DNA of 63,485 nt, filler included, from Octopus bimaculoides (Eukaryota): assembly GCF_001194135.2 (NCBI RefSeq). It is 6 parts of 5 records of this genome, joined end to end, with 100 filler letters (N's around TTAATTAATTAA, not from the genome) between each part and the next. Parts side by side here need not be neighbours in the genome. Positions count along the whole stretch, not along the records: positions 14,769 to 26,299 come from NC_068989.1; 5 more parts are not named here. The stretch is one strand, 5' to 3'. A program made the position numbers and the translations under genes. Shown piece by piece: positions 14,769 through 26,299 of this stretch; positions within the stretch are counted from its first letter, which is position 1, and each line of letters begins with the position of its first letter. Below the pieces are notes generated by a model. The model saw nothing but the letters and a program-made list of their open reading frames with translations, was not told where the DNA came from and did not search any database.

Positions 14769-15046
14769 AATTACTCTTGTGAGGATATTCACGTAAATAA
14801 TTTTTTTCATTTAATCCCCATTTTAATTTTCGTAAAAGTTTCCAAGTATCAATGAGGCATTTTGGCACATCTTCAATTTTCCCCATTCATGAGAGGCGCC
14901 CAGCCATCATTCATCTGAGAGTCCATCTACAGAATGTCCTCTCAAATTTCTATACAGCATATTTTGCTTTTTTTCTTCAAGTATATAAGCAACAATTTCA
15001 TTCCCAAGCAACGCTGGGTGCCTCTGCTAGTATATATATATATATA

Positions 15047-16296
15047 TCAGGCTGAGTAAAAAGTAAGCAACATTTTGAAACAAGAAATTCATCACAATAT
15101 ATTTCAACAAAGTGGAAATTTTATTCATCAAAATAAGTACCATTAAAATCAACACATTTTTGCCAACAAGTTACAAGTTAGATTATTCCGGTAACATAAA
15201 AATCTGGAGTTTTGGAGCTGATGAACTCTTTGAACACACTTTCAGCATTGGTTTGATTTTTGAACTTCTTCTCTTGCAGGAAACCATCAAGATACTTGAA
15301 AAAGTGGTAATCAGTAGGAGAAAGGTCTTGGGAATAAGCTGGATGGAGAAGAACTTCGTAGCCAAGTTCCTTCAACTTCTGGAGTGTCAGTAGTGGAATG
15401 TGTGGTTGAGCATTGTCTATTAACCAATCTGAGATGGAGGAGTAGGAGTTTTTCACTCATTTTGGCAATTTCATTGCAATGTTTCTGCAGTAATGGTTTT
15501 ATTGGGTTTTGAGAAGTTATAGTGGATGAGTCTAGCAGTACACCACCAAACAGTCACCATAACCTTTTTGAAGTGTTTGGGTTTAGGGAAGGTTTTCAGT
15601 GCTTCATTTTGGTCTAACCACTGTGAAGAATGTTTTTTATTATTGTACAGAATCCACTTTTCATTGCAAGTTACAATATGTTTGAGAAATGGATTGGTCT
15701 GCTTACAGAAAAGAAGCAATGAGCAAATTTCATATCTTTCTGATTTTCATTCAAATCATGTGCTACCTATTTGTCAAGCTTTTTTGATTTTCTGATCGCA
15801 TGCAAATGGTTGCAGACAGTTTTCTGGCTAACTTGAAGTTCTTTTGCCAGTTCTCAAGTGGTTTTACATGGATCTTTCTCAATTACGGTCTTTAACTGAC
15901 TGTCATCGATGACAGATGGGTGTCCACTACGCTCACGATCTTCAAGGCTCAGGTCACCACTGTGAAATTGTTTAAACCATTTTTGAGCTGATCACTCACT
16001 GGTCATTTCCTCACCAAACGTTTTGTTGATATCACAAGCAGTTTCAGCTGCTTTACATCCTTTTTTGAAGTTGAATAGCAAAATTGCTCCAATATTGTGC
16101 TTTGACAGTACCTTTTCAGATGATTGTAATAACTGTAAAAAAACATCAATGTTAATTTATTGACGCACTTAGGCAAGTTAATGTCTGTATTATCAGACAA
16201 TTGCAAAAAAATGTTTAAAAACAATTCAAAACTCTGCAAAAGTCCGGTACAAATTCTTCATGGCTCAAAACGTTGCTTACTTTTTACTCAGTCTCA
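15047..16296 (-). mobile_element. Full-length decayed mariner (DD34D) transposon, about 1.25 kb
   Basis: TIRs TCAGGCTGAGTAAAAAGTAAGCAACATTTTGA / TCAAAACGTTGCTTACTTTTTACTCAGTCTCA with TA on both sides. Minus-strand fragments IVTCNEKWILYNN, KKVMVTVWW, IDNAQPH and HPAYSQDLSPTDYHFF, interrupted by stops and frameshifts. Confidence 0.95.
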
Positions 16297-16317
16297 TATA
16301 TATGTATATATATGATG

Positions 16318-16437
16318 GACTTCTTTAGTTTCCATCTCCCAAATCCACTCATAAACATTTTCCCAAGGTGCCATGCAGTGGGAACCTGGAACCATGTGGT
16401 TGGGAAGCAAGCTTCTTACCACACAGCCACACCTGCA
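16318..16437 (-). mobile_element. Family A SINE 5' fragment
   Basis: CCAAGGTGCCATGCAGTGGGAACCTGGAACCATGTGGTT..CTTACCACACAGCCAC is the reverse complement of the A head. Confidence 0.8.
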
Positions 16438-17474
16438 CCTATCTATACACACACACACATGAAGGGCATCCAGCCATAGAAGCCAAACACCAAATAACTT
16501 GAGCAACAATTTATGGAAGCAGTGGCTCCAAATAACAATAAATAATTACTCAGATGGTGACATCCAACCAATGCCAGCATGGAAAGCAGGCACAAAATGC
16601 TGCTGACACATGCATGCATGCATGCGCGCATGTGCACACACACACACACACGCAATTTATTAAAATATAATGAATTAATTTTTATTAACAAAGTTCATAA
16701 ATTTATGGTGTTTAACATGTAATTAATTTTAACACTTTATTAATTTCTCATTTTAGAGCATAGTATTAACTGGTTTTACCAACTGGAGAACTAGAAGTTA
16801 GCATTCACTTATGTTTCTTTTCATCTCATTAAGTTCATGGAACAGGATAACCACAGTTAGGCTCTCTAGCCCTACATATAATACATGAAGATAAGACTTG
16901 TTCATAGTAGTTAAATTAACTTATAGATCATATTTATAACTCAGATCTCTCTGGTTTTTTGATAATTAAATTGTTTAATTACAATTAATTATAAAAATAT
17001 CAAAATGGGATTTGATCCATTTGAAATAAAGTTGAAAATAAATGTATTGTCTTTCGAGAGTTTATTAAAACAAAAAATTGTGTTGACTTTTCATTTATCA
17101 ATAACCAACTGCTAGATAATTAATACACATGAGACCTTTAAATATAGGACCATGGTCAAGAATTAATTTTAATATTATTATTGTTGTTTTAGCCCGAGGC
17201 AAACCCTGATTGAGCAGGCCTATGAGCAAAGACATTCTACTCATGACTATCCCTTTTTAGGGGTATGTAGGACTACATTATTTAATGGTATGATGTGATT
17301 TCAGAGAAATTTTGTTGAGGGATTGCATACAGGGTGTGTGTATGTGTGTGTGTGTGTGTTTTAGTGTGGGTCAATATGTGTAAATTTTAAAATTCTTTAT
17401 ATTTATATAGGAGAAAATTGTACATATGAAAATATTAAAAAAATCTCTTGTGAGAAAATATCCCCAGTTTTTAA

Positions 17475-17788
17475 TCAAATTTCAAGGTTTTCATTTTTGA
17501 GGAGGTATTTGTTATATATAAAACTTTCAGTATTAGTGTACATCCTTCTTCTGCAGAGAATCCAACACAAACATCCTAACACAATGCAGATCAGAATCAG
17601 CAATGCCATGGTAATGTAAATCCAGTATGGTATTGTAGTTTCAGTAACTATTTTTTCTTTACAATGTAACATCATACTTTTGTTTGAATATGGCTTCATA
17701 GTAGGTATTTCCTTTGTCCATGTACTCATGGAAGTTATTGTTGATAACTGCTCTGTTTGTGTAGTTGAAGGTGTTTCATCTTGGACTA
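17475..17788 (-). CDS. Terminal coding exon of a putative single-pass type I membrane protein: S/T-rich stalk, TM helix, short tail
   Basis: Acceptor tttttcag| at 17789, phase 1. Reads VQDETPSTTQTEQLSTITSMSTWTKEIPTMKPYSNKSMMLHCKEKIVTETTIPYWIYITMALLILICIVLGCLCWILCRRRMYTNTESFIYNKYLLKNENLEI*. AATAAA on the minus strand at about 17061 and 16656. Confidence 0.8.
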
Positions 17789-17986
17789 CTGAAAAATTTG
17801 AATGAACAATATAAGAGTGTGAAGCAATTGACTTGACAGTATTTTGAAAGTGTTAAAGCTTGTACAAATTTATAGTTAATATATTTTATGAGTAAGTAAA
17901 TTGGGAAGTTTAATAAAGTTGATGACTTGTAGCAGAGTTTAGAATTAAAACCACAGTAGCTCAGTAACAAGATAGGCCACAGAATA

Positions 17987-19195
17987 TCAGGGTAGGCTGA
18001 AAAGTTCATAGGCTGACTATGAAGGAGTGGTGCTACAGCTGTGAAATCTTGTATGTATTATTTTCAACTCTTCTTATTAATAACTGCATTGTGTCTTTCC
18101 AGGTAATCTGATATCTGACTGTTCAAAAAAAGACTTCAAAAGTAACTAGTAGCAAATTCTCTTGAAAATGGTCAAAATTTGGCATCATGATGTTATCAAG
18201 TACTTGCAGAAAATTTTTTTAGCTCCCAAGGATATTCATGCTGACATGGTTTCTACATTTGGGGGATGACATTTTATCAACATTATAAAAATAGGCAACT
18301 GAATTTAGGAGGTGGATGGAGAGTCTTGAAGATGACCCAAGGTCTGGATGCCCTGCAGCTGCCTCCATCAAGGAAAGCATTGATTGTGTTCACTACATGG
18401 AATTAGATGGCAGACAATTGACTATAAATGAAGTAGCTAATGCTATTAGCATGTCTCGTAAGAGAGTTGAGAATATTCTGCACTTGGCATGATAAAGGTT
18501 TCTGCTTGGTGGGTACCATGTCTTTTGACACCTGATCGAAAATGTGCACCAGGCTGATCACACCATAGGAAAATCTGACATTGTTTGAGGCACATCCAGC
18601 TGGACTTGAACATTTCCTAACCCAGGATGAGTGTTGGGTTCATTACTTTGAGCCAGAGACCAGGAGACAATCCATGCAGTGGAAACACCCCTCCTCACCT
18701 GCTCCAAAGAAGGCCAAGGTCGTCTGATCTGCAAGGAAAGTGATGGCCTCAAGTTTTTGGAATGCAAAAGGCATTGTGTATATTGACTATCTTCAGAAGG
18801 GCCATATCATCAATGGAGAGTACTATGCCAACTTTATGAAGCAATTATGAAAGGCTATCAAGACCAAATGCAGAGGAAAACTGATGAAAAGAGTCTTGTT
18901 TCATCAGGACAATACTCCGGTACACAAGCCATTGGTTTCAGTGGCTGCTGTGCATGACTGTGGCTTTGAACTGCTTGATCACCACCCTTATTCTCCTGAT
19001 TTTGCCTCATCTGACTATCATCTGCTCTCCAATATGAAAAAACACAAGTTTTCTCACCAATGGGATCTAAGCACTGCAGGAGTGATGGAAGAAGTATGAG
19101 GACTGCAAGGGGGACTATGTTGAAAAATAAACCAAATTTGGTCTCATTCCATGAGAGTATCTTAGTCAAACTGTGAACTTTTCAGCCAACCAATA
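17987..19195 (+). mobile_element. Full-length decayed mariner (DD34D), about 1.2 kb, in the last intron of the gene, antisense to it
   Basis: TIRs TCAGGGTAGGCTGAAAAGTTCA / TGAACTTTTCAGCCAACCAATA with TA flanks. Motifs TQDECWVHYFEPE, GKVMAS-FWNAKG, FHQDNTPVH and HHPYSPDFASSDYHL. Confidence 0.95.
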
Positions 19196-19460
19196 TATTT
19201 TGGCTGCAATTATTTGATTATACAATTTCAAACAGAAATTTCCATGATTTCCCACCAAAACATGGCTATAATTGAAGAAGGACAGTCAGTGCATAGTATT
19301 CAAGGGTTCCTGAGAGGACAGTGTTTTGGTTGCTGCTTGATTCTGGGTTAAAAGGAATCATTTGTCCATTATGAGCATATAACTTTCCTACCTCTTGTCT
19401 CACAAATATGTAGGTAGCCAATTCTTAGCCTAACACAACATATATTCTAGATTATCTACT

Positions 19461-19479
19461 GGTTAGGGTTAGGGTTAGG
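19461..19479 (+). repeat. Short interstitial (TTAGGG)n-like array
   Basis: GGTTAGGGTTAGGGTTAGG. Confidence 0.7.
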
Positions 19480-20668
19480 TTTCAGGTAATACAACCTCTG
19501 GCAAATAACTGTTGTCTATATTGTAATGTTATATATAAATAAATAGTTTCATCAAAAATCTAAAATTGATTTGGCTGTACTTGGGAAGCAGCATGCAGCC
19601 AAATTCAACCCTACCAATCATTTAGCATCCAGCTAATTAAACCTTCCACACTATGTTTGGAGAGAAAATATGGTTGGAAAGAAAACATAGAAAGGGATGG
19701 GGTTTTCCAGTTGGAGATGCAACAAAATAGTTTTAAATGTATTCATTTGGTTCATGTTATAGTGGTTGTTATAGACTTGACAAATTTAGCAAAGGTTGTA
19801 GTAGTATTGACTGAAGATTCAAAGCAACAAGACAGCTCTGTACATTAATGGATTTAGAATGTTGGCGAAGGAGGGTGTAGTTTCCAGAATATATGTGTGC
19901 TGCAAGAATGCATATATTGTTATTTATGTAAACTCCTTCCCATAACAGTAACAACAATGACAACACAAAAATTTGATGGTGTCTCAAGAGGTAACAAAAA
20001 TATTAAACAAGTTAGATACTCTGAGTTAGGTATTCTAAGATATCAATTTTACACTAATTTGATTCTCTGTGTATATAGTGGATGGTTTGTGCATTCAAAT
20101 CTGAAGCTAGTAATTTATTTGTAATTTTGAGTCAGTTACTTTAGATGTGAAGAATAATATTAAATTCTTCAAGAAAAGTTTACCTGTGAAAGATTAGCAT
20201 CATATCCAAGTGGACACTTTTCTCTCATAAATATTCAACTAAGAGTCAATGCTAATTTGATGATACACTTTGTGTATGGCTGCTGTGATGTATATATGCA
20301 TTTGCATGTGTGAATACAGTTGTGTGTATGTATGTGTAAAAGCAGTGACATGTATTTAGTATTATGTGTATCTTTATAAATACATGATTATGTATTTATA
20401 GATACTGTGATAAGTTTGTGTACACAAATTTTTATGTATAAATAGATTCAGTGATATGCATAAATGTATAGCTGTCTTGTGTGCAAACAACTACATCTTG
20501 GTTGCAGTAGTATGTGTCCAAATTATGTCCTTTTCATCACAGCTTCTTAAAATCCATCCTTCCTTTTTAGGACAGTAAGATGATATATGTATATATATAT
20601 GCATAGGTAGTTGTGTGTATCTGTCAATGTGGATATGTGCATGCTACTGTGTGTGCATGCATTGCATG

Positions 20669-20983
20669 CCCCAAGTTGACATCACTTCTCTGGCAGAGTC
20701 TCCAACAGAAGCAGAGGTCCAGAAAGCAATTAAGCTTCTCACAAAAGGCAAGGTATCAGGTTCTGTCTCCATCCCAGCTGAAATATACAAGGCAGGGGAC
20801 CAGTCTTGGCACAGAAGCTCACCAATCTCTTTCAGACCATGTGGCAATAGGAAGTCATTCCTCAGGAGTTCAAAGATGTTTCTACCATTCATCTCTACAG
20901 AAAAAAGGGAAACAGGCAATCTTGTGATAGCTTCTGAGGAATTTCACTCCTTGTCATTATTAGCAAAATACTCACAAGAATCC
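20669..20983 (+). mobile_element. RTE-clade LINE ORF2 fragment
   Basis: PTEAEVQKAIKLLTKGKVSGSVSIPAEIYKAG, then (frameshift) LFQTMWQ*EVIPQEFKD..IHLYRKKGNRQSCD..GISLLVIISKILTRI, the typical pre-RT and RT-start region of RTE elements. Confidence 0.85.
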
Positions 20984-21484
20984 TGTGTGCATGTGTGTGT
21001 GTGTTTGAGATGAAAAATATATCTCCTTTGTGGGTGTTAGTTATCAAATTATCCTAAAAACTGTTGTATAGTACACTATTAGCTAACTTATGTTGGTAGC
21101 ACTGCTTATGTTGGTAGCCATTATGATTTATTTATGTTCGAGTTTGTATATGCTATAAACGGCTATCAGCATCTATCTGTGGACAAAACATGAGGAAGTG
21201 GTTTCTGTTGAAAGTTTAACAAACCATGATGCTAGTTACATTGATACCTTTCTTTACATAAGCACAAATAAAGCTATGCTGTAACCACTTTGTTTACTTT
21301 TCATATTGTGTGTTTATTAAAAGCACACAAGTTGTGTACTATTAATCATAAATATATAAATATGTACAATTAAATTATAAATCATATGAAATTTGTGCTT
21401 TTCTGCTGTTTTGTATTCTAAATACATATATGTTAGTGTGTATATGTATGTCTTGAGCATGTATATGTGTTTATTGGTGTAGCG

Positions 21485-21600
21485 TGTGTATGTGGTTAAG
21501 AAGTTGGCTTTGCAACTATGTTGTTTCAGATTCAATCCCACTGTGTGACATTTTAATCAAATGTTTTCTACCATAGCCTTGAGTTGACCACAGTATTAAG
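21485..21600 (+). mobile_element. Degenerate family A SINE 5' fragment
   Basis: GTGGTTAAGAAG..TTCAATCCCACTGTGTGACA..TTTTCTACCATAGCCTTGAGTTGACCA aligns to the A head. Confidence 0.65.
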
Positions 21601-21775
21601 AATGAAATTTGGTACAAAGACTGTTGTTGCTTTGGAGTATTACATTTCATCTGTTGTCCAGTTTAGTTTAGAATCCCTACCTGACTTTGGGTACCTTTAT
21701 CAAAATCCACTTTGCTGCAAACATTCAATCCAGAACATGTTTGTTGCATTTTTTAGAGATGCCAATTCAACTTAC

Positions 21776-21907
21776 CAGAATTATAGCTAATTATCATATT
21801 TCCAAAATCTTTTGAAGTTTTGTATTTTGGGTTTATGATATACTCTAATGGAAATGTGGTCTGGGATGTGTTCATTTTACTATTCGTTAATAGTTGCCAT
21901 GATTTTC
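21776..21907 (-). CDS. Internal coding exon (132 nt, phase 1-1), second half of the CUB-like domain
   Basis: Acceptor atttatttttcag|GA and donor TCTG|gtaagt. Open frame (G)KSWQLLTNSKMNTSQTTFPLEYIINPKYKTSKDFGNMIISYNS; phases match both neighbouring exons. Confidence 0.8.
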
Positions 21908-23119
21908 CTGAAAATAAATAAATATATCTATTAATCAGAATTGGTCATTTACAATTGAAAAAATAATTTTTACTTTTTAGGTATTAATGTTAAAATAAAG
22001 TTGGTTTTAATGAAAAAAAACAAAAACATCATTGAGTGCAAAACCTACATCTAAGATTTGTTGTGTAAGAGTCACAGCAAACAAGACCTGATCAGACATT
22101 ATTCCCAATGAAAATATAACTGCAGTACATAGATATTTTAAGAGCAAAGGATCAAATTGTTTGGGTACTGGAGACAAATTGATATGAGTAGTTTTGATCT
22201 GTGGACTTGGTTAGCTGCTACTCCCAAAATAAAATCAACCATGATATTTAGATTTTATTAACATTTTTACAATTCTTATTTTAAAAAGCTGTTATACTGA
22301 ATACCAATAGCTAGTGTGTGAGAATGTATGTTTGGTGAAAAGAGATCTTTTAATATAAGGTCAGAGTGGCTGCTAGTTAACCAAGAAAACCTTTGCAATT
22401 GTATATCTCATGCATCTCAATTTATAACCATGATTTGGTGTGAAACTGCATAGAATTTTCCATTACTCTTGCTGCCACACAAATGCACCAGAACAATGAA
22501 TGACTGTAGTATGGACTAAGATCACCTGATAAGGACCATTGTTGCCATATCTGGAAACTGATATGCTGTGGCCTTTGTCTATTACATAACTGACACGGTT
22601 TTGAATGCTAAGCACTGTTAAAGATCCAAGAATCAAAAGTTATTATCACCATATCACAATTTGTGTACAAGAGTGCTGTGAATTATAGGTTTGCAATCAT
22701 TAGTTCACTGCATTTCTGTCAGCTATGTGAAGAATGTAAACTTCAGCAAAAAATTGGTACCCATTTACAGATGCTCTCTTGACTCCCTTGTTGGATGCCA
22801 GCCTGCCAGCCAGCCAGCTTGCATGTATATGTGTGTGTGTATTTCTGTACATACATATGTTTTTCTTTGGGATTTATTCAAATTTTTATCTTTGCAAACT
22901 TCAAGGTAGTCGCTAAAAAAGTGATAAGGCTCTTGGGTTTAAGACAAGACAACTCTTGGGGTTTGTGAGTGTCTGAATTGATTGGTGTGTATGGCTATGG
23001 ATAAATTTGCACTTATGAAGTGTGTGTGTGTGTGTTAAATTACTGTTTATATGTGTATATGTGTACACATTCCATATACAGGGTGCAGACAGAATTAACA
23101 CGGCCAACAAAGTTCAAGA

Positions 23120-23850
23120 AAAAAAAGCTTAAAATCTCAGAATTCTAAGGAGAACTACATGAAGAGGGCCAAGAAGGTGTTGAACATGTTGAAGTATCCC
23201 TGGAATCAAACATGTTGTGGTCTTTCTCTGATGTAAAAACATTTTACCAGAAAAAGGCGCATAAGTAGAATAACAAGTGGTTAGTCCACATGATCAGCAG
23301 TGAAGGACATGTCATGATTCCTCACATCTTTAATGTGGGCCTGAAGGTGAACCAGGATATGTACTAGGGGTTTATGGAGACTGTAGTGAAGTCCTGAATT
23401 GAAGAGGTTGCAGGAGAAAAATCTTATGAGTTCTAGCAAGATTCTGCATCTGCACACATGGCCAGGAACACACTAAAGTGACTCTCAGACAACTTTTACA
23501 ACCATGTCATCCTGGACTACTTTGTTTGGAGTGCAGTTGAGAGAGAGTCATCAACAAGTCTGCTTGTAATATCAAGGATGAGTTGAAGCAGCACATCTGC
23601 CAGGCATTCCAAGATTTGTCAGCTGCAACTGTGAAACACCTGGTTCCCAATTCTGCAGTCATCTGAGGAGGTTATCAAAGCGTGCATGCATTATATTGAA
23701 TAATTATTAGTATGTAGGTCCAGTAACTGTATTTTGAATTTTCAGTAAATCTTAAAAAAATAAATGCAATCTTACTCATTCAGTGTTACTATAAATTTTA
23801 TAAAGGGATTTTTTTAATACACAGATATCAGTTTCTTTCAATTAGCACCT
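23120..23850 (+). mobile_element. Decayed Tc1/mariner-superfamily transposase 3' part (maT/DD37D-like)
   Basis: Fragments KRAKKVLNMLK, FSDV/EK-F, GLKVNQDMY, *QDSASAH and LDYFVWSAVERE. Family assignment is an inference from motif style. Confidence 0.75.
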
Positions 23851-23966
23851 CACTTGTTAGCATCTCTACATGCAAAATCTTGTCTTTTGATGTGTTTAGT
23901 TGAAACCTGGGTATAGTTTGTATAAATTAAAGCAAGCAAACCCCAAACATGATGATGATGACCATG

Positions 23967-24275
23967 ACATTTTACCAGAAAAAGACACATAAATAGAATA
24001 ACAGGTGATTAGCCTATATGATGTTCCCAGGTTCATGAAAACCAAGTTTCCTGTTCACATCATGGTTTTTGGCAAGTTCAACAGTCATGATTTCTCACAT
24101 CTTTAATGTGGGCCTGAAGGTGAACCAGGATGTGTACCAGGGATTTCTGGAGACTGTAGTGAAGTCCTGGATTGAAGAGGTTGCAAGAGAAAAATCTTAT
24201 GAGTTCTAGCAAGATTCTACATCTGCACACATGGCCAGGAAGACACAAAAGTGACTCTCAGACAACTTTTACAAC
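23967..24275 (+). mobile_element. Second partial copy of the same maT-like segment
   Basis: Aligns to 23239-23502 with long identical stretches. Confidence 0.85.
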
Positions 24276-24541
24276 TTAAGGAGATAGAGTGGCTGAAACA
24301 GGGGAGTGTGGGAGTCAGCATTCTCATGGTATTTATTTTCAGCCTTCAGATTTAGATCTAAACAAAATTCACTTTGCAATTCATTCTCTTTAGCATTCAC
24401 AGGATTGATAAAAGAAGCATCAGACATATTTTAGTGTTGATCCAATCCAACAAATTTGTGACCTTGACCCAATATAAGAAATCATTATCATGCTTAAAAC
24501 ATTTTTCAAAAATCTTAATCCTGACTTCTGAGTTACCTTAC

Positions 24542-24654
24542 CATCATAGTATGAGAAAGAGGAATACGTTGGCTTTGCACTTGTGATTGTTGTTATAATA
24601 TCAATCTGTAAAATATGCATTGGTTTAATTTTGAATGTCCATTTACATGTTTTC
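24542..24654 (-). CDS. Internal coding exon (113 nt, phase 2-1), first half of a divergent CUB-like domain
   Basis: Acceptor ttttgtttgtttaacag|G and donor GATG|gtaagg. Frame KTCKWTFKIKPMHILQIDIITTITSAKPTYSSFSYYD(G) shows CUB-like C-x-W-x-F/I and terminal YDG. Confidence 0.8.
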
Positions 24655-25222
24655 CTGTTAAACAAACAAAAAGAAAATACTGAGAATTTTAAGCTATTGT
24701 ATAAGTTACATTACAATTAATCAATCAATGGATGATTCGGGCTGTATTTTTTTTATAATGCGGGGGAGGTAGTAGTGAGTAGTATTGTTGGTAATGTTAT
24801 AGTGGTCATGACTAATGACAACTTTGTTAGTGATGATGGTTAATGATTGTCATTGTTGTTAGCTAATTTAAGTTGGCTTCACTTTTCTTTTTGAATGATT
24901 CATAAAATTTCTCATAATTGTATGTTATCTGATTCATGTAGAGGAAATAAAGTCTAAATTAAATATGATGATGAAAATGGTCAGTGAACAGCAATTGAAC
25001 AAATGGTTCCTATATATCTTTCCCCAAACACCTTTGCTAATGGTGATACTTTCTTATAATTGAGGACTTGTGTAATTATCATAAACACAACAATTATTAA
25101 TGCAGATTTACAATTATATTTCTCTAATCAGCTAAGAATACTAAGATGGAATCTAATAAATAAATTTATAACACATAAGAAGCAGATGCATGGCTATTAT
25201 AGTTTAACTTGAAAACTGCATA

Positions 25223-25897
25223 TAAGAGGTGCATTCAAAAAGTATCTGACTTCATTTTTTCCTGCTAAAACAAATCCCCATGAGCAAAATCCTTTGGGTG
25301 GGAGATTATGCCACCCTTCCTGCACATGCATGAAAACTTTTGGGCTGGTAGGTAGGTGGCGTGAGCTCCAGGCTATCATGCCTAGAATACAGATGTGTAG
25401 TGTGTCCTTGTTGGATTTTTGTTTTTACTGAATGCATCAAGTTTTGCTAAAAGCCTGGTGATACTCAAACTCAAACCATCCAGAAGATTCAGCAGGCTTT
25501 GGCAATGATGCCATGGGCAAAACTCAGATCAAGGAGTGGTACAACTACTGCAAACATAGCTGCTCTTCAGTAGAATGTGAAGCATGCTCAGGCAAGCCAT
25601 TCACAAGCTGAAATGAGGAGCCAACTGAGAAGGTTTGGTGAATAGTCATGGAAGACCATCATGTAACAAACCAGAAAATTACTCATGAAGTGGGAATAAG
25701 CACAGGATCAGTGCATTCCATTTTAACAGAGGATTTGTGCATGCAGAGATTGTTGGTGAAATTCACCCCGCAAGGTGCTGGCAGAGCAGCAGAAGCAACT
25801 TTGCATGAAAATTGCTCAGAACATGCTTGACTGAGCAAACCACAACTCAGACTTCATGAAGGCCATCATCACTGGTGATGAGACATGAGTTTATGGT
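25223..25897 (+). mobile_element. Mariner 5' half (TIR, leader, transposase up to the first catalytic D)
   Basis: TIR-like AGAGGTGCATTCAAAAAGTATCTGAC; CIKFC*KPGD..., HSILTEDL, ITGDET*VYG, then abrupt end. Confidence 0.85.
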
Positions 25898-26045
25898 CCC
25901 TGCTCAATGCGTTTGGTTAACTTGCTTGAAAATGAAAATTTGAAGAGCATCCACTACATGTCTGGGAACTGACGTGTAATAGCTGGGAACCAATGTGGCC
26001 TTCTGACCAGTGGCCCGGGAACAAAATTTGCTTAGCGGGTGCAAA
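25898..26045 (-). mobile_element. Inverted mariner 5' leader and first codons
   Basis: Minus strand ends ACC AAA CGC ATT GAG CAG (TKRIEQ, a mariner N-terminus). The upstream CCCAGCTATTACAC..CAGACATGTAGTG aligns by eye with the leader at 25340-25420. Confidence 0.55.
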
Positions 26046-26200
26046 CTCAGTTTCAAAATTTGGCACTACTGGAGAAGTGAGGAGCCGAGTTCTGGGAGTA
26101 TGCATGTCACAAATTTGCGCATGTGCCCGTGTTAGTCGTAAGTAGTCAAATTTAGCACACAGGTAAAAAACGAGACGCTCGCTACTTGCTGTAAATGGAG
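26046..26200. promoter_or_regulatory. CpG-rich promoter-like patch at the 5' side of the minus-strand gene
   Basis: Seven CpGs between 26086 and 26181 after about 9 kb of CpG-poor DNA; NRF1-like TGCGCATGTGC at about 26116. Confidence 0.4.
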
Positions 26201-26299
26201 GGTGGGTTATCCATCTAATACAAGAAGAAAATTGCAGATTAATTGAATAAAAACATGAAAAATAACAAAATGACATTTCACTGAAAAGTAAACCATTCT

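What the first reader, a model, noticed from the sequence alone, without database searches (positions are those of the whole stretch)
17475..24654. Unannotated-looking spliced gene for a divergent CUB-like single-pass membrane protein
Seen: three minus-strand exons with strong GT-AG sites and matching phases give ...KTCKWTFKIKPMHILQIDIITTITSAKPTYSSFSYYDGKSWQLLTNSKMNTSQTTFPLEYIINPKYKTSKDFGNMIISYNSVVQDETPSTTQTEQLSTITS...IPYWIYITMALLILICIVLGCLCWILCRRRMYTNTESFIYNKYLLKNENLEI*. The ORF track shows only pieces of it. Established: CUB domains carry C-x-W-x-I, a YDG turn and a terminal GF-x-x-Y strand; the C-x-W and YDG motifs are clear here and FGNMIISY resembles the terminal strand, but the second Cys pair is missing. 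Inference: a lineage-divergent surface receptor or auxiliary subunit with N-glycan sequons (NTS, NKS), a mucin-like stalk, palmitoylatable Cys before RRR, and Tyr/di-Leu sorting motifs in a 25-aa tail.
Basis: partly seen in the sequence, partly recalled or inferred. Interest (0 to 1): 0.7.

Follow-up and report, generated by a model that had tools for sequence, protein, structure and literature searches.

The report
Annotated octopus CUB-like membrane protein gene

Summary
The minus-strand exons 24654-24542, 21907-21776 and 17788-17475 have AG/GT borders and join in frame into 185 codons.

The gene is not unannotated. The piece is 100% identical to O. bimaculoides CM046609.1, and the 185 aa are the exact C-terminus of RefSeq XP_052826515.1 (LOC106881348 isoform X1).

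They are exons 15-17 of a 17-exon gene found only in octopods here. It is full length in O. sinensis LOC115216771 (654 aa). In O. bimaculoides an assembly gap splits it into two models.

Architecture: signal peptide, MIB/HERC2 domain, four CUB-like units, Ser/Thr-rich stalk, one TM helix, 25-aa tail. Each unit is an exon triplet with identical intron phases. e1 and e2 are two thirds of unit 4. Its first exon, which holds the partner Cys, lies 11.5 kb upstream, outside the piece.

Unit 4 misses Pfam CUB. It models at pLDDT 80 as a beta-sandwich whose best PDB matches are nearly all CUB domains.

Argonauta has the same exon structure, and dN/dS against it is 0.22.

An alternative last exon (16132-16116) gives a TM-less isoform.

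Function is untested, and no paper mentions the gene.

The parts
24542..24654 (-). e1: exon B of the fourth CUB-like unit (coding exon 15 of 17). It encodes KTCKWTF...SFSYYD(G). The upstream intron is phase 2 and the downstream intron is phase 1.
   Evidence: sequence, AG/GT borders. (identical to P0006 and P0008). (same exon in O. sinensis and Argonauta).
21776..21907 (-). e2: exon C of the fourth CUB-like unit (coding exon 16). It encodes (G)KSWQLL...GNMIISYNS. Both flanking introns are phase 1.
17628..17788 (-). First part of terminal exon e3: a Ser/Thr-rich extracellular stalk (aa 82-135 of the 185). It is 34% S+T and contains the NKS sequon and one Cys.
   Evidence: It is the fastest-evolving region, with 29-35% identity to Argonauta.
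17553..17627 (-). Transmembrane helix in e3 (YWIYITMALLILICIVLGCLCWILC).
   Evidence: Mean Kyte-Doolittle hydropathy 3.0 over 19 residues. It is the only hydrophobic segment besides the N-terminal signal peptide in the full-length homologues. Identity to Argonauta is 48-63%.
17475..17552 (-). 25-aa cytoplasmic tail (RRRMYTNTESFIYNKYLLKNENLEI) plus the TGA stop codon.
   Evidence: The motif NTES..(Y/C)N..LLK.EN.E(I/L) is conserved in both Octopus paralogues and Argonauta P0004. dN/dS for TM plus tail is 0.17 against Argonauta.
16116..16132 (-). Alternative terminal coding exon (TT ATT ACA ATC ATC TGA, giving ...NS-VITII*), used by RefSeq isoform X2, which skips e3 and lacks the TM helix.
   Evidence: peptide located at L002 60267-60281. 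(acceptor ttttttacag). (P0008 is XP_052826516.1). The O. sinensis counterpart P0002 ends VITIIWSGTVKA.
21908..24541 (-). Intron between e1 and e2. It contains a 192-nt direct repeat (23311-23502 and 24084-24275).
17789..21775 (-). Intron between e2 and e3. It carries ORFs that look like mariner and reverse-transcriptase fragments.
   Evidence: Pfam did not confirm the transposon-like ORFs.

Best explanation
The three exons are coding exons 15-17 of one Octopus bimaculoides gene. RefSeq splits it into LOC106875589 and LOC106881348 because of a 10-N assembly gap.

The gene encodes a type I membrane glycoprotein of about 650 aa:
- a signal peptide;
- one MIB/HERC2 domain, here on the extracellular side;
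- four tandem CUB-like domains;
- a Ser/Thr-rich stalk;
- one transmembrane helix;
- a conserved 25-residue cytoplasmic tail.

e1 and e2 encode the last two thirds of the fourth, most divergent CUB-like domain. e3 encodes the stalk, helix and tail. A downstream alternative last exon replaces e3 and yields a secreted form without the anchor.

Shown here: gene structure, homology, predicted fold, topology features and long-term purifying selection.

Inferred: the protein acts as a cell-surface binding protein or co-receptor. Its CUB and MIB/HERC2 ectodomain would bind extracellular partners. Its short tail (invariant LL, C-terminal hydrophobic-Glu-hydrophobic) would couple to trafficking or scaffold proteins. 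The soluble isoform would act as a free or competing form of the same binding module.
For: Identity of the locus:
- The piece is 100% identical over 11,531 nt to CM046609.1.

One gene, not two:
- LOC106875589 ends in exon B of unit 3, and LOC106881348 starts in exon C of the same unit. A run of 10 N lies at that exon's 5' end.
- O. sinensis has a single 654-aa model.

Architecture:
- Pfam MIB_HERC2 E=1.7e-20 and CUB E=1.2e-9 on P0002.
- Unit 3 alone scores 22.6 bits, above the gathering threshold.
- Intron phases are 2,1,0,1 followed by 2,1,1 four times, in both O. sinensis and Argonauta.
- Two Cys are invariant across all 19 unit sequences.
- hhalign of unit 4 against unit 2 gives E=3e-5.

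Fold:
- AlphaFold2 of unit 4 gives pLDDT 80.3 and pTM 0.75, all-beta.
- Foldseek top hits are spermadhesin, TSG-6 CUB, neuropilin-2, C1r/C1s, MASP, PCPE-1, Neto2 and Kremen.

Topology:
- An N-terminal hydrophobic leader plus a single C-terminal hydrophobic segment, with 9-11 N-x-S/T sequons, almost all before it.

Constraint:
- dN/dS is 0.22 against Argonauta.
- Domains, TM and tail are 50-80% conserved, the stalk about 30%.

Isoforms:
- X1/X2 pairs exist in both O. bimaculoides and O. sinensis.
Against: - No transcript evidence could be retrieved. Exact look-ups of the 174-aa and 84-aa products found no assembled RNA contigs. Use of e3 versus the alternative exon therefore rests on RefSeq models and conservation.
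- Unit 4 does not match Pfam CUB even at E<=10, and PDB sequence searches found nothing.
- The AlphaFold alignment included units 1-3, which may pull the model towards a CUB fold. TM-scores are only about 0.5 with rmsd 5-7 A.
- Between O. bimaculoides and O. sinensis the split is 27 nonsynonymous to 6 synonymous changes (omega about 1.2). Exons are not significantly better conserved than introns (96.7% against 95.2%, p=0.10). Recent constraint looks weak, or the counts are too small to tell.
- The beta paralogue in the O. vulgaris assembly has a frame-breaking deletion in its terminal exon.
- The functional part (co-receptor, tail motifs) is inference only.
Confidence: 0.88

Rival explanations
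1. The exons are relics. The fourth unit and the TM exon are decaying and make no functional protein in O. bimaculoides. The gene models only reflect an open frame that has not yet been lost.
For: - Omega is about 1.2 between O. bimaculoides and O. sinensis over 364 codons (27 N to 6 S).
- Exon and intron identity are not significantly different.
- The O. vulgaris beta copy has a frameshifting deletion in the homologous terminal exon.
- Unit 4 is the most divergent unit and fails Pfam.
Against: - The open frame, splice sites and stop codon are intact in O. bimaculoides, O. sinensis (alpha and beta) and two Argonauta genes.
- dN/dS is 0.22 and third-position changes are in excess against Argonauta.
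- Conservation is patterned: the linker evolves fast, while domain, TM and tail evolve slowly.
- There are no indels in 576 exon columns, against 259 gap columns in 9,151 non-exon columns.
Confidence: 0.06
2. The main product is the secreted isoform. e3 is rarely or never used in O. bimaculoides, so the protein is a soluble multi-CUB factor rather than a membrane receptor.
For: - Isoform X2 models that skip e3 exist in two species, with a strong acceptor at 16133/16132.
- The O. vulgaris alpha model (P0007) also lacks the TM helix.
Against: - TM plus tail is under purifying selection (omega 0.17).
- It is present in frame in six gene models from three species.
- The X2 exon encodes only 5-12 residues and differs between species (TGA in place of TGG).
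Confidence: 0.12
3. The e1+e2 domain is a generic beta-sandwich that is not evolutionarily a CUB domain.
For: - No Pfam CUB hit for unit 4.
- hhalign against units 1 and 3 is not significant.
- Foldseek also lists non-CUB jelly rolls (ColG collagen-binding domain, PliG) with similar TM-scores.
- The second disulfide is missing.
Against: - Unit 4 has the same three-exon layout and intron phases as units 1-3. Unit 3 passes Pfam CUB and unit 1 scores just below its cut-off.
- The Cys1 and Cys2-x-W positions are invariant across all four units.
- hhalign against unit 2 gives E=3e-5 in the correct register.
- The top 28 Foldseek hits are all CUB domains.
Confidence: 0.1

Closest known systems
SOL-1 (C. 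elegans auxiliary subunit of GLR-1 glutamate receptors); comparison from general knowledge
   Same: A type I membrane protein with four tandem CUB domains, one TM helix and a short cytoplasmic tail. This is the nearest overall layout.
   Different: No detectable sequence relationship: searches returned only octopod proteins. SOL-1 has no MIB/HERC2 domain. No link to any ion channel was tested here.
Neto1/Neto2 (kainate-receptor auxiliary subunits) and LEV-10
   Same: CUB ectodomain, single TM helix and short tail. Neto2 CUB domains are among the Foldseek matches (7f59_E, 9n4q_E).
   Different: Neto and LEV-10 carry an LDLa module, and none was found here. They have two or five CUBs rather than four. 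There is no orthology.
Neuropilin-1/2
   Same: CUB-containing single-pass co-receptors with a short tail ending in a scaffold-binding C-terminus, and with soluble isoforms made by alternative 3' ends. NRP2 CUB domains are ranks 3-5 in Foldseek.
   Different: Neuropilins also have FA58C and MAM domains and only two CUBs. There is no sequence-level relationship.
Spermadhesins and the TSG-6 CUB_C domain (single CUB domains)
   Same: They are the best structural matches to the unit 4 model (1spp_B E=1.8e-4, 2wno E=2.6e-4).
   Different: They are soluble single-domain proteins. Identity is 12%, TM-score about 0.5 and rmsd 6-7 A.
Mind bomb (MIB1/2) and HERC2 E3 ubiquitin ligases
   Same: They share the MIB_HERC2 domain (PF06701, E=1.7e-20). 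The O. vulgaris orthologue is even named 'E3 ubiquitin-protein ligase MIB2'.
   Different: No ZZ, ankyrin, RING or HECT domains were found. The domain follows a signal peptide and precedes CUB domains, so it should be extracellular. The MIB2 name is a misnomer.

Membership tests
CUB domain (Pfam PF00431) | Sequence match to the CUB profile at or above the gathering score (21.4 bits) | tested here: not met
   Window protein: no CUB hit at E<=10. Unit 4 from four species: none. Sister units in the same protein: unit 3 scores 22.6 bits (passes), unit 1 scores 19.6 bits, and whole P0002 scores 38.9 bits.
CUB domain (Pfam PF00431) | Jelly-roll beta-sandwich of about 110 residues that superposes on solved CUB domains | tested here: met
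   The AlphaFold2 model of unit 4 has pLDDT 80.3, pTM 0.75 and nine strands. The top 28 Foldseek PDB hits are CUB domains with probability 1.00, but TM-scores are about 0.5. Caveat: the input alignment contained units 1-3.
CUB domain (Pfam PF00431) | First disulfide pair (N-terminal Cys with the Cys of C-x-W/F) | tested here: met
   C4 and C35 of unit 4 are the only invariant columns across 19 sequences of all four units. C4 lies on exon A at L002 40187-40279, outside the window piece.
CUB domain (Pfam PF00431) | Second disulfide pair (Cys3-Cys4) | tested here: not met
   Unit 4 has no further Cys in any species. Unit 2 lacks the pair too. Units 1 and 3 have extra Cys.
CUB domain (Pfam PF00431) | Homology to bona fide CUB repeats in the same protein (shared exon structure) | tested here: met
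   All four units are exon triplets with intron phases 1|A|2|B|1|C|1 in O. sinensis and Argonauta. hhalign of unit 4 against unit 2 gives E=3e-5, probability 73%. Against units 1 and 3 it is not significant.
CUB domain (Pfam PF00431) | Ca2+-binding acidic triad of the cbCUB subset | not tested
   No residue-level structural comparison was made.
CUB-type auxiliary subunits of ionotropic receptors (SOL-1, Neto, LEV-10) | Multi-CUB ectodomain, single TM helix and short tail | tested here: met
CUB-type auxiliary subunits of ionotropic receptors (SOL-1, Neto, LEV-10) | Sequence orthology to SOL-1, Neto or LEV-10, or presence of an LDLa module | tested here: not met
   Only octopod proteins were returned. 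Pfam finds only MIB_HERC2 and CUB.
CUB-type auxiliary subunits of ionotropic receptors (SOL-1, Neto, LEV-10) | Physical and functional association with a ligand-gated channel | not testable with these tools
   This needs co-expression electrophysiology or co-purification.
Mind bomb / HERC2 E3 ligases | MIB_HERC2 domain | tested here: met
   PF06701 E=1.7e-20, residues 36-95 of P0002. The domain is encoded outside the window piece.
Mind bomb / HERC2 E3 ligases | Catalytic RING or HECT domain with ZZ or ankyrin modules, and cytosolic location | tested here: not met
   No such Pfam domains were found. The N-terminal signal-like leader and C-terminal TM helix place the domain outside the cell.

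The most novel reading that the evidence does not exclude
The family could be an octopod-specific auxiliary subunit or co-receptor for ligand-gated channels or other surface receptors, working like SOL-1, Neto or LEV-10. It would use an extracellular MIB/HERC2 peptide-binding domain, otherwise known from cytosolic E3 ligases, together with four CUB domains. It would be regulated by a switch between membrane-anchored and secreted forms through alternative last exons.
Probability: 0.1. Interest if true: 0.6.

Novelty: new member of a known kind. Interest (0 to 1): 0.25.

Why it matters
The main value is as annotation.
- LOC106875589 and LOC106881348 should be merged.
- The O. vulgaris orthologue is wrongly named an E3 ligase (MIB2).

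Biologically it defines a small family of type I surface proteins. The family was seen only in octopods here. It was duplicated independently in Octopus and Argonauta.

The family combines an apparently extracellular MIB/HERC2 domain with four CUB domains. No paper in the searched library discusses it. It is a reasonable candidate for lineage-specific cell-surface biology, but nothing here points to a new mechanism.

Tried and rejected
1. The word-indexed protein search with the 185-aa product found only O. vulgaris P0001. Searching with P0001 found only itself. I first treated P0001 and its locus L001 as the orthologue and computed conservation and dN/dS on it. It is the beta paralogue, so those numbers describe paralogues. 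The '43-nt deletion' is a defect of the O. vulgaris beta copy, not of this gene.

2. The index-free profile search found P0002. That led to the true matches.

3. The search for the unit's first exon inside the piece (24655-26299) with blastn, tblastx and pattern scans found nothing. The exon lies 11.5 kb upstream of e1.

4. AlphaFold2 of P0001 without an alignment failed, with pLDDT 29.5.

5. PDB sequence searches with the protein, with P0001 and with the unit 4 and unit 2 profiles gave no meaningful hit.

6. Rfam found nothing in the piece. Pfam on 18 intronic or flanking ORFs confirmed only one mariner fragment.

7. Exact look-ups for transcript contigs carrying the 174-aa or 84-aa products found nothing. 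DNA for the O. bimaculoides beta gene could not be fetched because its range is too long.

8. Literature searches for the LOC identifiers and for MIB-HERC2 with CUB or octopus returned nothing relevant.

9. The O. vulgaris model's extra terminal exon (KIQRDLNSKYDL) is alignable at window 16924-16962, but the acceptor AG is AA here. I rejected it as an exon of this gene.


Full report
**Observation**

On the minus strand, 24654-24542, 21907-21776 and 17788-17475 are bounded by pyrimidine-rich AG acceptors and by GTAAGG and GTAAGT donors. The intron upstream of e1 is phase 2 and the other two are phase 1.

ORF length alone is not remarkable in this 33% GC piece. Four unrelated ORFs of 103 aa or more are present.

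**Where the piece comes from**

The piece 14769-26299 is 100% identical over all 11,531 nt to Octopus bimaculoides CM046609.1 (assembly GCA_001194135.2; locus L002 61631-50101).

The 185 aa are identical to the last 185 residues of XP_052826515.1, 'uncharacterized protein LOC106881348 isoform X1' (P0006). An older model, XP_014787192.1 (P0011), already contained most of them. The gene is therefore annotated, though uncharacterised. No paper in the searchable library mentions the LOC identifiers.

**How this was found, and a false start**

- The word-indexed search with the 185 aa returned only an O. vulgaris protein, P0001, covering e2 and the start of e3.
- I first treated its locus L001 as the orthologue.
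- An index-free profile search then found P0002.
- A search with P0002 and a look at its cluster members gave the full set.

There are two paralogues in Octopus:
- Alpha: this window; O. sinensis LOC115216771 X1 (P0010) and X2 (P0002); O. vulgaris CAI9728266.1.
- Beta: O. bimaculoides LOC106877781; O. sinensis LOC115210489; O. vulgaris P0001.

Argonauta hians has two further genes.

L001 is the beta paralogue. Its 43-nt length difference, which puts the TM helix out of frame, is a defect of that O. vulgaris copy. The O. sinensis beta protein P0014 is intact.

**Whole gene**

The O. sinensis alpha gene has 17 coding exons:
- two for the signal peptide;
- two for a MIB/HERC2 domain (Pfam E=1.7e-20);
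- four triplets of exons (A, B, C), one per CUB-like unit;
- a terminal exon for stalk, TM helix and tail.

Intron phases are 2,1,0,1 and then 2,1,1 repeated four times. They are identical in O. sinensis and Argonauta.

The window's e1 is exon B and e2 is exon C of unit 4. e3 is the terminal exon. Exon A of unit 4 (IPSCFLNPIVDVISGPKRFLNVPQTAPVDLDV) lies at L002 40187-40279, about 11.5 kb upstream of e1 and outside the piece. This explains the negative searches inside the piece.

In O. bimaculoides, LOC106875589 (P0009) ends by reading through the donor of unit 3 exon B. LOC106881348 starts at an internal Met of unit 3 exon C. Ten Ns sit at that exon's 5' end. The two RefSeq models are one gene split by an assembly gap.

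**Is the e1+e2 domain a CUB domain?**

At sequence level, no:
- Pfam CUB does not match the window protein or unit 4 of any species.
- PDB sequence searches are empty.

Other evidence says yes:
- Unit 3 scores 22.6 bits, above the gathering score. Unit 1 scores 19.6 bits, just below it. The whole protein is significant.
- All four units share the exon-triplet layout.
- A 19-sequence alignment of all units has two invariant Cys (Cys1 and the Cys of C-x-W/F). It keeps the Y-D/E-G turn and the terminal G-F/M-x-I-x-Y strand in register.
- hhalign of unit 4 against unit 2 gives E=3e-5 over 75 columns. Against units 1 and 3 it is not significant.
- With that alignment AlphaFold2 gives an all-beta model with pLDDT 80.3 and pTM 0.75. 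Its top 28 Foldseek PDB matches are CUB domains: spermadhesin, TSG-6, neuropilin-2, C1r/C1s, MASP, PCPE-1, Neto2 and Kremen. TM-scores are about 0.5.

Caveats: the alignment included the other units, and the structural similarity is moderate.

The first pair is complete only when exon A is included.

**Topology**

Full-length homologues have an N-terminal hydrophobic leader and a single C-terminal hydrophobic segment. They carry 9-11 N-x-S/T sequons, almost all before that segment. In the window, the TM helix has mean hydropathy 3.0 over 19 residues and is followed by RRR. This fits a type I membrane glycoprotein with the MIB/HERC2 domain outside the cell.

**Selection**

| Comparison | Result |
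|---|---|
| Window vs Argonauta, 132 ungapped codons of e1, e2 and TM+tail | dN 0.28, dS 1.29, omega 0.22 |
| Same, TM+tail only | omega 0.17 |
| Same, differences by codon position | 34/29/60 |
| Same, aa differences | 54 observed, 75.6 +/- 3.8 in neutral simulations |
| O. bimaculoides vs O. sinensis, 364 codons | 27 nonsynonymous, 6 synonymous; omega about 1.2 |
| O. bimaculoides vs O. sinensis, exon vs intron identity | 96.7% vs 95.2%, p=0.10; exons have no indels |

By region, identity to Argonauta is as follows:

| Region | Identity to Argonauta |
|---|---|
| Exon A of unit 4 | about 0.8 |
| Exon B | 0.55-0.61 |
| Exon C | about 0.5 |
| TM helix | 0.48-0.67 |
| Tail | 0.56-0.64 |
| Stalk | about 0.3 |

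Long-term purifying selection is clear. Recent constraint is weak or unmeasurable with so few differences.

**Isoforms**

RefSeq isoform X2 (P0008) skips e3 and splices e2 to a short exon at window 16132-16116 (acceptor ttttttacag; VITII-stop). O. sinensis has the matching X2, which ends VITIIWSGTVKA. This predicts one anchored and one secreted form. I could not retrieve transcript contigs to verify either.

- The NTS sequon is present in alpha and in Argonauta (NTT) but lost in beta (STS).
- The stalk is 34% Ser/Thr here and much richer in Argonauta P0005.
- The Cys before RRR is not conserved. It is Tyr in O. sinensis alpha, in beta and in P0004, and His in P0005.
- The LL of the tail is invariant.
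- Y-N-K/R-x-L-L-K-x-E-N-x-E-I/L is largely conserved, with the Tyr replaced by Cys in beta. The C-terminus is hydrophobic-Glu-hydrophobic in all complete models. Reading these as sorting or PDZ-type signals is inference.

**Mechanism**

Shown: a secretory-pathway, single-pass protein with a multi-CUB ectodomain and an alternative soluble form.

Inferred from established knowledge of CUB proteins (neuropilins, Neto, SOL-1, LEV-10, Kremen): the ectodomain binds extracellular protein partners, and the short conserved tail links to trafficking or scaffolding. I put about 0.1 on the specific auxiliary-subunit idea.

**Comparison with known families**

- The layout is closest to SOL-1 (four CUBs and a TM helix).
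- The pairing of membrane and soluble isoforms resembles neuropilins.
- There is no sequence relationship to any of them. No LDLa, FA58C or MAM modules were found.
- The MIB/HERC2 domain is otherwise known to me from cytosolic E3 ligases. The 'MIB2' name on the O. vulgaris orthologue is a misnomer, because no RING, ZZ or ankyrin domains are present.

**Verdict**

The gene is an octopod-restricted member of the CUB-domain single-pass membrane proteins. Interest is low to moderate. The points of note are the annotation fixes and the apparently extracellular MIB/HERC2 domain.

Noticed in passing
window 16116-16132 (-): A short alternative last coding exon (VITII-stop) with a strong acceptor. RefSeq isoform X2 uses it, and the result is a product without the TM helix. 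The O. sinensis counterpart reads on to VITIIWSGTVKA (TGG in place of TGA).
   Followed up: yes
L002 9958-9967 (O. bimaculoides CM046609.1; outside the window piece): A run of ten Ns sits at the 5' end of exon C of CUB unit 3. It splits one gene into two RefSeq models, LOC106875589 and LOC106881348.
   Followed up: yes
L001 about 51393-51403 (O. vulgaris OX597817.1, beta paralogue): A frame-breaking deletion in the terminal exon puts the conserved TM helix and tail out of frame in the O. vulgaris assembly. The annotated model P0001 patches this with a different last exon and also skips unit 4 exons A and B. The O. sinensis beta protein is intact. The cause could be an assembly error or recent pseudogenisation.
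   Followed up: partly
P0007 (O. vulgaris CAI9728266.1): The alpha orthologue is named 'E3 ubiquitin-protein ligase MIB2', apparently only because of its MIB_HERC2 domain. It has a signal peptide and CUB domains and no ligase domains.
   Followed up: yes
window 23311-23502 and 24084-24275: A 192-nt direct repeat, 95% identical, with starts 773 nt apart, in the e1/e2 intron. Both copies align to a single site in O. sinensis (L003 80507-80654). This suggests a duplication specific to O. bimaculoides or a collapse in the O. sinensis assembly.
   Followed up: partly
window 16639-16811: This 173-nt stretch downstream of e3 is single-copy here but aligns to five consecutive tandem copies in O. sinensis (L003 88566-89234).
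   Followed up: no
window 15471-15719 (-), 15178-15456 (-): A mariner-type transposase fragment. Pfam Transposase_1 scores E=5e-16 on 15471-15719. The adjacent ORF looks like its continuation, but Pfam did not match it.
   Followed up: partly
window 18316-19169 (+) and 20615-21013 (+): ORFs in the e2/e3 intron look by eye like mariner transposase and reverse-transcriptase fragments, but Pfam did not confirm them. The block 19721-20644 also aligns at 74% to the beta-paralogue locus, just upstream of its terminal exon (L001 50073-51039).
   Followed up: partly
window up to about 16801 (+); L002 59599-70284 (-): A called gene on the opposite strand, whose product matches DUF7083, overlaps the 3' end of LOC106881348, including the alternative last exon.
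   Followed up: no
L004 (Argonauta hians BAAFZT010000031.1:5237919-5263027): The two Argonauta family members lie tail to tail about 2.4 kb apart. In unit 4 and unit 2 they are more similar to each other than to either Octopus paralogue. This suggests independent duplications or gene conversion.
   Followed up: partly
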